This document shows positions 37,701 through 40,700 of a stretch of DNA of 64,000 nt, piece by piece. A program made the position numbers and the translations under genes. Position 1 is the stretch's first letter; each line of letters starts with the position of its first letter. The stretch spans positions 22,940,001 through 23,004,000 of the forward strand of contig NC_045707.1 in the NCBI RefSeq assembly GCF_009834535.1. Reading direction: 5' to 3'. This DNA comes from Camelus ferus. Taxonomy: Eukaryota. The notes beneath the pieces are model-generated. The model saw only the letters and a list, made by a program, of their open reading frames with translations. It searched no databases and was not told the origin of the DNA.

Positions 37701-40700
37701 GATACATGTCCCTTTTGAGATTCAGGGGTCCTCTAATCTCCACGTCCTTCTGTCTGAGAGCGATCCTTTGACCCCCATATCCCCTAGTTCGAGGGGTGCC
37801 GGAAGTCATACTCACGCCTAGAAAATCTGAAGACACACCTGCGGTCACACACGGGTGAGAAGCCATACATGTGTGAGCACGAGGGCTGCAGTAAAGCCTT
37901 CAGCAATGCCAGTGACCGAGCCAAACACCAGAACCGGACCCATTCCAATGAGGTGAATGCCCCACCCAAGAGACCTTCCCCACTTACAGAAGTCACCCAC
38001 TGGGAAGATTCCCCCTAAGAAATCCCTTAGCCCAGCACCCACTCCACAGAGGTGAGTCCTCCCCACCCACATAGTTCACCTGGAGAAGGCCTTTCTGAAA
38101 CCGCGACTGTCCACCTAGCACCCCTCCCCCTACCTCTAACCAGCCAAAGGGCTAAACTAGAATAGACTCACTCTATCTGGTGGAGACCCCTGGTCCCTTC
38201 AACCCTGAATTTATGAGGCCTCGCAGACCTGGGTTCAGCCCCTCGGCTTTCCCCAGCTGGGCTGTCAGTTTTCCTAATCTTCCCCTTGATCCTCTCATCT
38301 TTTGCTCCAAGGGCCCTACTCTACGTCCTTCCTTGGGTGCTATGCATTCCTCCCTGGCCCCCCTCGTCCTCGCTTGGGGCCACCCCTTTTCCCCACTTCT
38401 GCATTTTCCCACTTTGATCCTTTTGCCTGCTGTCTTCACTTTCCACTCAACAGAAGCCATATGTGTGTAAGCTCCCTGGCTGCACCAAACGCTACACAGA
38501 TCCCAGTTCGCTCCGGAAACATGTCAAGACAGTGCATGGTCCTGATGCCCACGTGACCAAGCGGCACCGAGGGGATGGCCCTCTGCCCCGGGCACCGGCT
38601 CTTTCCACAGTGGAGCCCAAGAGGGAGCGGGATGGAGGTCCCATCAGGGAGGAGAGCAGACTGACCGTGCCAGAGGGTGCCATGGTGAGGCAACCCCCTG
38701 CCTCCATACCCCCACCCGCCCTGCCGACATCTTTCTAGTCCCCTCCCAACTCATCCATCCCTGCTATGTAAGGCTCTCTTCTGTGGCCAGTCCTCCAGTC
38801 TCTTATCTGAGTGTTATTCCTTGGGCTACCCTAAATCTAGGGCTTTTAGTGTAATTAAGTACTTAATTGGTTCGACAAACTCTTATATAGGACTGAGGAT
38901 ATTACTCTAAGCCTTTTACCTGGGGCTGTACACAGTCTAAATATATCTGGGGAGGAATTTGTTAGTGATGCTGTTTCCTGTATAATTTCACATACTCCTC
39001 ATAATAACGTCATGAGACAGGAACTTACTCTCCCCATTTTCAAATGAGGAAACTCAGGCATAAAGAAATTGTCCAGAGGCATAGAATGAAGAGCACAAGT
39101 TTGATCCCAGGTAGTCTAGGCTCTTCTCATCAACAGCTCTCCTCCAGTTTGCCTGTCTCACCTGCTCAGCCCTCTCTACGCCCGTAAGCAGTCACTGGGT
39201 CACAGGCTTGAGCCACTTACCAAGTTCAGGGAGCTGTGGGGAAGGGGGATGGGTGCCACCCTCAGCCCTCATCTTCCCCACAGAAGCCACAGCCGAGCCC
39301 TGGGGCCCAGTCATCCTGCAGCAGTGACCACTCCCCAGCAGGCAGCGCAGCTAATACAGACAGCGGTGTGGAAATGACCGGAAATGCAGGGGGCAGCACT
39401 GAGGACCTGTCCAGCTTGGATGAGGGGCCTTGCATTGCTGGCACTGGTCTGTCTACTCTTCGCCGCCTTGAGAACCTCAGGCTGGACCAGCTACATCAAC
39501 TCCGGCCGATAGGGCCCCGGGGCCTCAAACTGCCCAGCTTGCCCCACACTGGTGAGAGCTCAGTGTGGGCGTTGGTTGCTGGGCTGAAATCTGCACCCTC
39601 CCTGAAGCTAGAAGGAGGACTTCACCCTTCAGGGCTGCCATGTAGCACCTTTGTACAATTAGAAAAAGGTCCCTTTTCCTCAAGACACTTTCCTTCCATC
39701 TGTCAGAAAATTATTGTGATGTATAAAGTCTACGACGTGAATGCTGTCCTCCAGGATTGTGCAGTGTACAACCTGTAGGACTGTTCATAGCAGCCCTGAA
39801 TCCTGATGGCCCAGAAGCAGAAAGGGAATGGGAGCAGGAGACAGAACTGAGTGCTTATAGTTAAGGAATCTTCCCTGGGATTCCAGGGCAAGGCTATCCC
39901 ATGGGGGAAGCAGGGGGAGATGCAGAGGGCTCCCTGGCGACCCTGCCTTTTCTGCCTATCACTTGCAGGCACCCCTGTGTCCCGCCGTCTGGGCCCCCCA
40001 GTTTCTCTTGACCGCCGCAGCAGCAGCTCCAGCAGCGTCAGCTCAGCCTATACTGTCAGCCGCCGCTCCTCCCTGGCCTCCCCTTTCCCCCCTGGCTCCC
40101 CACCAGAGAATGGGGCATCCTCTCTACCTGGCCTCACGCCTGCCCAACACTACCTGCTCCGGGCAAGATATGCTTCAGCCAGGGCGGGTAGTACCCCACC
40201 CACTGCAGTACCTAGCCTGGATCGGATGGGAGGTCTTCCGGCACCTCCCTGGAGAAGCCGAGTCGAGTATCCAGGATACAACCCCAATGTAGGGGTCACC
40301 CGGAGAGCCAGTGACCCAGCCCGGGCTGCTGACCGCCCTGCCCCAGCCAGAGTCCAGAGGTTCAAGAGCTTGGGTTGTGTCCATACACCTCCCACAGTGG
40401 CAGGGGGAGGACGGAACTTCGATCACCAACTCTCAACATCTGTCTACTCACCACAGCCTCCCAGCATCACTGAAAATGTTGCCATGGATACCAGAGGGCT
40501 ACGGGAGGAGCCAGAGGTTGGGACCTCCATGATGGGCAGTGGTCTGAATCCTTATATAGACTTCCCAACTGCTGATATTCTCGGATATGGGGGATGTGAG
40601 GCGGGGGCAGCTGAGACTTATGGGGCTAGAGGTCCAGGCTCCCTGCCTCTTGGGCCTGGTCCACCCACCAACTATGGCCCCAACCCCTGTTCCCAGCAGG

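What the first reader, a model, noticed from the sequence alone, without database searches (positions are those of the whole stretch)
38920..38980. A 61-bp copy of the GLI1 3'UTR inserted into a MIR in the same gene's intron 10
Seen: 38920-38980 (ctggggctgtacacagtctaaatatatctggggaggaatttgttagtgatgctgtttcctg) matches 41828-41888 at 57/61 positions, same orientation, 2.9 kb away. The donor segment ends 2 nt before the GLI1 AATAAA, so the copy lacks the hexamer. It splits an ancient MIR at the ctttac|tataat junction with no TSD or poly(A), so it is not L1 retrotransposition. Inference: a templated insertion from double-strand-break repair, using nearby DNA or the gene's own RNA. It could duplicate 3'UTR upstream poly(A) or miRNA elements in the intron, and the direct repeats could promote deletion of exons 11-12.
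Basis: partly seen in the sequence, partly recalled or inferred. Interest (0 to 1): 0.7.

Follow-up and report, generated by a model that had tools for sequence, protein, structure and literature searches.

The report
Camel-specific templated insertion in GLI1 intron
A 58-base piece of the end of the camel GLI1 gene's 3'UTR was copied, in one clean microhomology-guided step, into an old MIR repeat in intron 10 of the same gene; it is a real, camel-lineage-specific and most likely neutral mutation scar, a neat example of a known kind of event.

Summary
Window 38920-38980 matches 41828-41888 at 57/61, same strand, with only these two copies in the window. The window is Camelus GLI1. The copy lies in intron 10 inside a MIR, and the donor ends 2 nt before the AATAAA.

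New here: orthologous GLI1 loci of two ruminants, a dolphin and a bat have an empty site, one clean 58-column gap. Wild-dog and mole loci have no copy in intron 10 either. The intronic copy shares three camel-derived substitutions with the camel 3'UTR. So it is a camel-lineage copy of the camel's own 3'UTR, not a dispersed repeat.

The target already held CCTG. The donor starts with CTG and ends with CCTG, so the net insertion is 58 nt, with 3-nt and 4-nt junction microhomology, 13/16 homeology at the return junction and no target loss.

Best reading: a one-step, out-and-back, microhomology-mediated template switch to DNA 2.9 kb downstream in cis. An RNA template cannot be excluded.

Age is roughly 40-47% of the camel branch, poorly bounded. 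The scan had no other report on this stretch.

The parts
38923..38980 (+). Net 58-nt camel-lineage insertion. It can equally be placed at 38919-38976, because CCTG flanks both ends.
   Evidence: There is a single 58-column gap in two ruminants, Delphinus and Saccopteryx (alignment A2). The blast breakpoints are window 38920 / 38977 against L001 4542 / 4541.
38920..38980 (+). The 61-nt stretch homologous to the 3'UTR: 3 nt of pre-existing CTG plus 58 copied nt. It carries a UGUA at 38927-38930.
   Evidence: Identity is 57/61 to 41828-41888. It shares the camel-derived bases at positions 28, 46 and 50 with the camel 3'UTR (A1).
38919..38922 (+). The pre-existing target tetranucleotide CCTG. It is the left copy of the flanking 4-nt repeat and the departure point of the switch.
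   Evidence: The empty sites read CCTG (Delphinus), CTG (Lycaon), CGTG (Saccopteryx) and CCAG (ruminants).
38977..38980 (+). CCTG at the end of the copied segment. It is the right copy of the flanking repeat and the return microhomology.
41828..41888 (+). The donor: the last conserved block of the GLI1 3'UTR. It starts with CTG, ends with CCTG, and ends 2 nt before the AATAAA at 41891-41896.
   Evidence: It is orthologous and conserved in ruminants, dolphin, bat and wild dog (A1).
38800..39170 (+). The ancient MIR-type SINE in GLI1 intron 10 that received the insertion (approximate limits).
   Evidence: The MIR core lies at 39030-39070. nhmmer matches the joined flanks to other MIR-like copies at 54699-54819(-) and 51822-51884(-). 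The element is present in the orthologous introns of other Laurasiatheria.
38445..38690 (+). GLI1 exon 10 (fifth zinc finger and following residues); the end coordinate is approximate.
39284..39553 (+). GLI1 exon 11.
   Evidence: tblastn of GLI1 proteins.
39956..41707 (+). GLI1 exon 12 coding part with the stop codon; the start coordinate is approximate.

Best explanation
This is a lineage-specific, most likely neutral, 58-nt templated insertion, i.e. a local non-tandem duplication. On the camelid branch, a DNA 3' end in the MIR of GLI1 intron 10 ended in ...ACCTG. It left its template and paired through CTG with the same chromosome or its sister 2.9 kb downstream, at the start of the last 3'UTR block. 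It copied 58 nt up to the next CCTG. It then returned to the original site, where the new end CTGTTTCCTG re-paired with CTTTTACCTG. Synthesis then went on into TATAAT.... This is an out-and-back, microhomology- and microhomeology-mediated template switch of the FoSTeS/MMBIR type, or polymerase-theta-like synthesis at a break. Shown: the empty site in other mammals, the direction of copying, the junction homologies and the absence of target loss. Inferred: a one-step replicative mechanism, a DNA rather than RNA template, and neutrality.
For: The site is empty in two ruminants, Delphinus and Saccopteryx, as one clean 58-column gap with no target bases lost. Lycaon and Condylura also lack a copy there.

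The 3'UTR block is orthologous in all the aligned species, so it is the donor. The intron copy carries the three camel-derived bases (positions 28, 46, 50) of the camel 3'UTR, so its source is the camel-lineage GLI1 3'UTR itself.

Junctions: microhomology is 3 nt (CTG) at the left junction and 4 nt (CCTG) at the right. The joint probability under random copy-paste in this window is 1.3e-3. The 13/16 homeology between the target and the donor's 3' boundary has a random P of about 3e-5.

A donor 2.9 kb away in cis and in the same orientation is what proximity-dependent template switching predicts. Microhomology lying at one end of a 7-14-nt, 70-90% identical block is described as a signature of replicative template switching (PMC6902434). 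Templated insertions copied from nearby sequence and flanked by microhomology define MMBIR-type events (PMC8421209).

There is no poly(A), no long TSD and no L1 endonuclease site at the RNA-3' side.
Against: The MMBIR templated insertions modelled in yeast use templates within about 100 bp (PMC8421209). Polymerase-theta insertions are generally under 25 bp and come from the break's flanks (PMC12426944). So 58 nt from 2.9 kb away is at the long and far end for both.

The donor lies wholly inside one exon, on the sense strand, in a transcribed region. An RNA or cDNA template would leave the same product. Class 2 templated sequence insertions also show microhomology (PMC5110952).

The pre-insertion CCTG is inferred by parsimony, not observed in a camelid (dolphin CCTG, wild dog CTG, bat CGTG, ruminants CCAG).

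Only one event is available, so the mechanism cannot be proved.
Confidence: 0.62

Rival explanations
1. RNA-templated patch. A piece of GLI1 (pre-)mRNA 3'UTR, either reverse-transcribed or used directly as a template, was used to repair a double-strand break in intron 10. This would be a class 2 templated sequence insertion or an endonuclease-independent, L1-RT-type event. The RNA could be the nascent transcript tethered at the locus.
For: The donor is sense-strand, exonic and transcribed. There is no TSD of L1 type and no poly(A), and microhomology lies at both junctions. These are the features listed for class 2 TSIPs (PMC5110952). A nascent transcript in cis would also explain why the donor is the same gene.
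Against: Donors of experimental class 2 insertions mapped to 18 of 24 human chromosomes without obvious preference (PMC5110952). A donor 2.9 kb away in the same low-abundance gene is therefore unexpected for capture from the transcript pool. Germline expression of GLI1 was not tested here. There is a clean return with no target loss and 13/16 homeology at the return site. That fits a strand returning to its own template better than end-joining of a patch. Nothing in the 58 nt, such as a splice junction or a poly(A), marks RNA.
Confidence: 0.15
2. Two steps. First, a 2.9-kb tandem duplication of the segment from intron 10 to the end of the 3'UTR, with junction microhomology CCTG. Later, a 2.85-kb deletion with microhomology CTG removed all of the first copy except its last 58 nt.
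For: The two steps reproduce the observed sequence exactly. Each step is a common mutation type with the observed microhomology (junction letters).
Against: It needs two independent events with precisely placed breakpoints in one lineage, plus an intermediate allele with duplicated exons 11-12. No remnant of such an intermediate was seen in the loci or in the runs examined.
Confidence: 0.06
3. The 61-mer is a member of a dispersed repeat family, or the insert is an assembly artefact.
For: No genome-wide search of the camel genome was possible with these tools. The DNA contigs of the runs were filtered out by read laying.
Against: The 3'UTR block is single-copy and orthologous in every GLI1 locus fetched. 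The intron copy shares three camel-specific derived bases with the camel 3'UTR. There are only two copies in the 64 kb. Fourteen DNA runs under two organism labels and at least 6 studies hold all sampled 31-mers, including the junction-spanning ones. Records of run X17 cover both junctions without a mismatch.
Confidence: 0.03
4. The copy has been put to use. A duplicated upstream poly(A) element (a UGUA-containing block) promotes intronic polyadenylation and a C-terminally truncated GLI1, or otherwise affects splicing of intron 10.
For: The copy carries a UGUA (38927-38930). A weak hexamer variant CATAAA lies at 39059-39064. RNA libraries hold the intron stretch.
Against: There is no AATAAA or ATTAAA within 100 nt downstream. 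The copy has picked up 2 changes in 61 nt, the same number as the 3'UTR copy, and this matches the intronic rate, so no constraint is visible. RNA contigs continue past 39064 to 39184. RNA-library contigs may come from pre-mRNA or from DNA.
Confidence: 0.04

Closest known systems
MMBIR/FoSTeS-type templated insertions (MMB-TI; microhomology- and microhomeology-mediated template switching)
   Same: A short segment is copied from a nearby template in cis. Microhomology lies at both switch points. A 10-16-nt imperfect match has the perfect microhomology at one end. The donor is left intact and no target bases are lost (PMC8421209, PMC6902434).
   Different: The template distance is 2.9 kb, whereas the yeast-derived signature uses templates within about 100 bp. 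This is a single simple out-and-back event fixed in a species lineage, not part of a complex rearrangement or a disease or cancer allele.
Class 2 templated sequence insertions / TSIPs (Onozawa et al.; review PMC5110952)
   Same: The insert is tens of nt long and copied from elsewhere in the genome. The donor is intact and transcribed. There is no long TSD and no poly(A), and the junctions show microhomology.
   Different: Class 2 donors are described as distant genomic regions spread over many chromosomes and are thought to pass through RNA. Here the donor is 2.9 kb away in the same gene, and nothing marks an RNA intermediate.
Polymerase-theta-mediated end joining (TMEJ) templated insertions
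   Same: The mechanism would be priming on minimal base pairing, copying, dissociation and re-annealing (PMC12426944).
   Different: TMEJ insertions are generally under 25 bp and are templated from the sequences directly flanking the break. This one is 58 nt from 2.9 kb away.
Class 1 TSIP / L1-mediated retrocopy of an mRNA 3' end
   Same: The inserted sequence comes from the 3' end region of an mRNA, in sense orientation.
   Different: There is no poly(A). The copy stops before the AATAAA. There is no TSD of 5 bp or more beyond the 4-nt CCTG that the donor also carries. There is no TTTT/A site at the expected junction.

Membership tests
Microhomology-mediated templated insertion (MMBIR/FoSTeS type) | The inserted sequence has an intact template nearby on the same chromosome. 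| tested here: met
   The donor at 41828-41888 is 2.9 kb downstream in the same orientation, and is intact and orthologous in other mammals.
Microhomology-mediated templated insertion (MMBIR/FoSTeS type) | Microhomology or microhomeology is present at both template-switch junctions. | tested here: met
   CTG (3 nt) and CCTG (4 nt) are present, with a joint random probability of 1.3e-3. The 13/16 homeology at the return junction has a random P of about 3e-5. This rests on the parsimony-inferred target CCTG.
Microhomology-mediated templated insertion (MMBIR/FoSTeS type) | The event arose by replicative template switching, requiring Pol delta/Pif1-type BIR machinery or a stalled fork. | not testable with these tools
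   This is a historical germline event. Only the sequence scar is available.
Class 1 TSIP / L1 target-primed reverse transcription | A target-site duplication of at least 5 bp. | tested here: not met
   Only a 4-nt CCTG repeat is present, and the donor itself carries those letters at its end.
Class 1 TSIP / L1 target-primed reverse transcription | A poly(A) tract 10-30 nt downstream of a poly(A) signal, with insertion at a TTTT/A site. | tested here: not met
   The copy ends 2 nt before the AATAAA and has no A-tract. The 3' junction reads CCTG|TATAAT.
Class 2 TSIP (RNA-derived patch at a double-strand break) | No TSD and no poly(A), with NHEJ-type junctions (microhomology, microdeletion or non-templated bases). 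| tested here: met
   Microhomology is present. No microdeletion and no non-templated bases were found.
Class 2 TSIP (RNA-derived patch at a double-strand break) | The template is a distant genomic region and passes through reverse-transcribed RNA. | tested here: inconclusive
   The donor is local (2.9 kb) rather than distant. The 58 nt lie within one exon, so they hold no splice junction or tail that could show RNA.
GLI1 gene (identity of the host locus) | Five GLI-type zinc fingers, a long C-terminal exon orthologous to GLI1, and a tail-to-tail SH3-(WW)-PH-RhoGAP neighbour (ARHGAP9-like). | tested here: met
   There is a 2GLI hit at E 1.4e-15. The best hits are named GLI1, at 86-90% identity. 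The exons are 100% identical to a Camelus dromedarius GLI1 entry. A RhoGAP/PH/SH3 gene lies downstream on the minus strand in the fetched loci, and window 42182-42357 aligns to it.
MIR (mammalian-wide interspersed repeat) as the target | The flanks joined across the insert form one continuous element that is similar to other MIR copies and is present in orthologous introns. | tested here: met
   nhmmer aligns the joined flanks across the junction to 54699-54819(-) with E 4e-4. The orthologous sequence is continuous in ruminants, dolphin and bat. No curated MIR consensus was available in the tools, so the name MIR rests on the core motif recalled from memory.

The most novel reading that the evidence does not exclude
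The 58 nt were copied from the gene's own nascent or retained RNA. A break in intron 10 of a transcribed GLI1 allele would have been repaired by reverse transcription of the 3'UTR of a transcript tethered in cis. This would be a natural, fixed germline example of transcript-templated break repair in a mammal. The intron copy would then be a dated fossil of the ancestral camelid 3'UTR.
Probability: 0.12. Interest if true: 0.55.

Novelty: new member of a known kind. Interest (0 to 1): 0.3.

Why it matters
Fixed, cleanly resolved templated insertions are rarely documented with all three of these: an intact donor, empty sites in outgroups, and both junctions interpretable. This one is a textbook-quality natural example of an out-and-back template switch over 2.9 kb.

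It extends the size and distance usually quoted for MMBIR- or polymerase-theta-type insertions. It shows that such events contribute to lineage-specific intron sequence.

It is also a presence/absence marker for camelid phylogeny. The intron copy preserves the ancestral AT at positions 24-25, which the functional 3'UTR later changed to GC.

It has no demonstrated effect on GLI1, so its value is to mutation-mechanism and comparative-genomics work, not to Hedgehog biology.

Tried and rejected
- **Rfam scan:** a scan of 36000-44000 found no family.
- **Metagenome scans:** both scans, for a 20-mer and a 23-letter pattern of the repeat, found nothing. No host-contaminant orthologues came that way, and both scans are now used.
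- **Read laying:** the long DNA contigs of X1 and X11 were left out by the tool's filter. Only short records of the RNA-library run X17 covered the junctions. A 33-nt piece at 39027-39059 in all runs is another MIR copy elsewhere in the genome.
- **Second run search:** filtering on 'WGS' returned only un-indexed runs of the same species label.
- **Reaching another camelid:** look-ups failed for beluga isoform X2, for the dromedary partial protein and for the camel's own exon-12 ORF. Cluster listings showed no Vicugna or Lama entry. Whether alpaca or llama share the insert therefore stays open.
- **INHBE route to an alpaca locus:** I considered it and dropped it, because the site lies about 9.96 kb from the INHBE stop, at the very edge of the 10-kb flank.
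- **Rejected readings:** L1 retrotransposition (no poly(A), no long TSD); a dispersed repeat (shared camel-derived bases, single orthologous 3'UTR copy); a MIR origin for the 3'UTR block (nhmmer with the intron MIR finds nothing at 41700-41960); NAHR risk (the longest perfect block is 23 nt).

Full report
**1. The observation**

Window 38920-38980 and 41828-41888 agree at 57 of 61 positions, on the same strand, 2908 nt apart. blastn-short gives E 5.7e-21, and no third copy exists in the 64-kb window. A gapped alignment runs 5 nt further (ATAAT) after a 1-nt gap on the 3' side. The stop codon of the long last exon is at 41705-41707 and AATAAA at 41891-41896.

**2. The locus**

- The exons around the site encode GLI-type zinc fingers: a hit to PDB 2GLI at E 1.4e-15.
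- The 618-aa last-exon ORF finds proteins named 'zinc finger protein GLI1' at 86-90% identity.
- tblastn of beluga and Oryx GLI1 maps eleven coding exons. This places the copy between exon 10 (38445-~38690) and exon 11 (39284-39553).
- A partial GenBank protein named GLI1 [Camelus dromedarius] is 100% identical to the window's exons. The window is therefore Camelus.
- In the fetched loci the next gene downstream, on the opposite strand, has SH3, PH and RhoGAP domains. This fits the GLI1-ARHGAP9 arrangement that I know from other mammals.

**3. The target is a MIR**

I joined the two flanks and searched the window with nhmmer. The joined flanks align continuously across the junction to another MIR-like copy at 54699-54819(-), with E 4e-4. 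The MIR core lies at 39030-39070. The name MIR itself rests on my memory of the consensus, because no curated consensus was available in the tools.

**4. Is the insert real DNA?**

- Fourteen DNA runs, under two coded organism labels and from at least six studies, hold 100% of 47 sampled 31-mers of 38740-39200. At that sampling density the set includes junction-spanning words.
- Read laying left the long DNA contigs out through its filter. Two 151-nt records of run X17 lie on 38792-38942 and 38915-39065 without a difference.
- Mis-assembly is therefore very unlikely.

**5. Cross-species test (the decisive result)**

I took GLI1 proteins returned by the searches and fetched the encoding loci.

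| Locus | Source |
|---|---|
| L001-L010 | Ruminant Logan contigs (the protein's 90% cluster holds a Cervus entry) |
| L014 | Oryx dammah |
| L012 | Delphinus delphis |
| L013 | Lycaon pictus |
| L015 | Saccopteryx leptura |
| L011 | Condylura cristata |

- In the ruminant contigs that reach intron 10 (L001-L005), Oryx, Delphinus and Saccopteryx, the intron aligns up to window 38920-38922 and resumes at 38977-38979. The 61-mer hits only their 3'UTR.
- The multiple alignment A2 shows one clean 58-column gap in the ruminant contig L001, Oryx, the dolphin and the bat, with no other indel at the site.
- Lycaon aligns as a single gapped match across the intron and Condylura only in part. Neither has a copy of the 3'UTR block in intron 10.
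- The insertion therefore arose on the camel lineage, after it split from ruminants and cetaceans.

**6. Direction and source**

- The 3'UTR block is orthologous and well conserved in all the aligned species, so it is the donor (A1).
- Positions 28 (C), 46 (G) and 50 (T) of the 61-mer are derived states. Both camel copies share them, and all five outgroup sequences lack them. The intronic copy was therefore made from the camel-lineage GLI1 3'UTR, not from a repeat consensus.
- Of the four differences between the copies, positions 24-25 (AT to GC) changed in the 3'UTR after copying. The intron copy keeps the ancestral AT.
- Positions 43 and 51 changed in the intron copy.

**7. Junction anatomy**

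- The empty sites read TA-CCTG-TATAAT in the dolphin, CTG-TAAT in the wild dog, CGTG in the bat and CCAG in the ruminants. By parsimony the camel target held CCTG.
- In the camel, CCTG stands at 38919-38922 and again at 38977-38980.
- The donor begins with CTG (41828-41830, preceded by a mismatching G) and ends with CCTG (41885-41888).
- The net insertion is therefore 58 nt, with 3 nt of microhomology at one junction, 4 nt at the other and no loss of target bases.
- The reconstructed target block and the donor's 3' boundary also agree at 13 of 16 columns with one gap.
- In simulations on this window, random copy-paste gives junction microhomologies of at least 3 and at least 4 together in 0.13% of trials. 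Random 16-mers reach 13/16 in about 0.003% of trials.

**8. Mechanism**

A strand ending in ...ACCTG that pairs at the donor CTG, copies 58 nt and returns by its new CCTG end to the place it left reproduces the sequence exactly, in one step. This is what microhomology-mediated template switching looks like: templated insertions copied from nearby sequence and flanked by microhomology (PMC8421209). Microhomology at one end of a 7-14-nt, 70-90% identical block has been proposed as a signature of replicative repair (PMC6902434).

Polymerase-theta insertions work by a similar logic. They are generally under 25 bp and copied from the break's own flanks (PMC12426944), so this event would be an outlier for that route.

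Class 2 templated sequence insertions share the lack of TSD and poly(A) and the microhomology. They are described as coming from distant regions through reverse-transcribed RNA (PMC5110952). Here the donor is 2.9 kb away in the same gene.

I cannot exclude an RNA template, because the 58 nt lie within one exon on the sense strand. A two-step route (a 2.9-kb tandem duplication, then a 2.85-kb deletion) gives the same product but is less parsimonious. L1 retrotransposition is rejected: there is no poly(A), the copy stops before the hexamer, and there is no TSD beyond the 4 nt that the donor also carries.

**9. Age**

- An ML tree on 2201 ungapped intronic columns gives a Camelus branch of 0.073 substitutions per site.
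- The two copies differ by 4/61, i.e. about 0.033-0.035 per lineage, or roughly 45% of that branch.
- The polarised counts (3 changes before copying, 2 and 2 after) give 40%.
- Taking about 60-65 My for the split of camelids from other artiodactyls (my own knowledge, not tested here), the point estimate is about 25-30 My. The Poisson range runs from under 10 My to the whole branch.
- Both organism labels in the runs carry the insert.
- Whether alpaca and llama share it could not be tested, because no Lamini sequence was reachable.

**10. Function**

- The copy carries a UGUA (38927-38930) but no AATAAA or ATTAAA within 100 nt downstream. Only AATAAC (39003-39008) and the weak variant CATAAA (39059-39064) are there.
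- It has changed as fast as the neighbouring intron.
- RNA libraries hold the stretch, and their short records run on to 39184. Contigs cannot show 3' ends, and they may come from pre-mRNA or from DNA.
- The longest perfect block between the two copies is 23 nt. That is far below what I know to be needed for efficient homologous recombination in mammals, so deletion of exons 11-12 through this repeat is not a realistic concern.
- I conclude that the insert is most likely neutral.

**11. Verdict**

The finding is a new, well-resolved member of a known kind of mutation. It is of modest interest, mainly as a clean natural example and as a phylogenetic marker.

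Noticed in passing
window 28785-28795 (INHBE exon 2, + strand): The INHBE reading frame shifts by +1 inside the mature TGF-beta domain. The frame reads ...AASFHSA, and then the expected [12 protein letters not shown]...CGCS-stop continues intact in the next frame. This looks like a 1-nt insertion (GCC-T-GTC). It is either an assembly error or a very recent frameshift.
   Followed up: partly
L013:5815-5855 (Lycaon pictus GLI1 intron 10): The wild dog has its own extra sequence of about 35 nt at the same position of the same MIR. 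It looks like a local imperfect duplication (ACGTACAAT... / ACGTAATAT...). This hints that the spot is prone to slippage or template switching in more than one lineage.
   Followed up: no
window 41851-41852: The camel 3'UTR changed two adjacent bases (AT to GC) in an otherwise strongly conserved block just upstream of the poly(A) signal, after the copy was made. The intron copy preserves the ancestral state.
   Followed up: partly
window 21750-21897, 29749-29879, 31171-31302, 33102-33232: Four runs of N, 542 bases in all. Three of them lie between INHBE and the first coding exon of GLI1. They were left as they are.
   Followed up: no
window 39284-39670: The GenBank entry KAB1269676.1 (GLI1 [Camelus dromedarius], 595 aa) reads from exon 11 on into intron 11 and then jumps to the end of exon 12. 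It is a mis-predicted gene model rather than a real isoform.
   Followed up: partly
window 38740-39200: Several RNA-seq and metatranscriptomic runs, labelled reproductive system metagenome or organism B, hold 81-100% of the sampled words of this intronic stretch. The cause could be intron retention, pre-mRNA or DNA carry-over; it could not be told apart from contigs.
   Followed up: partly
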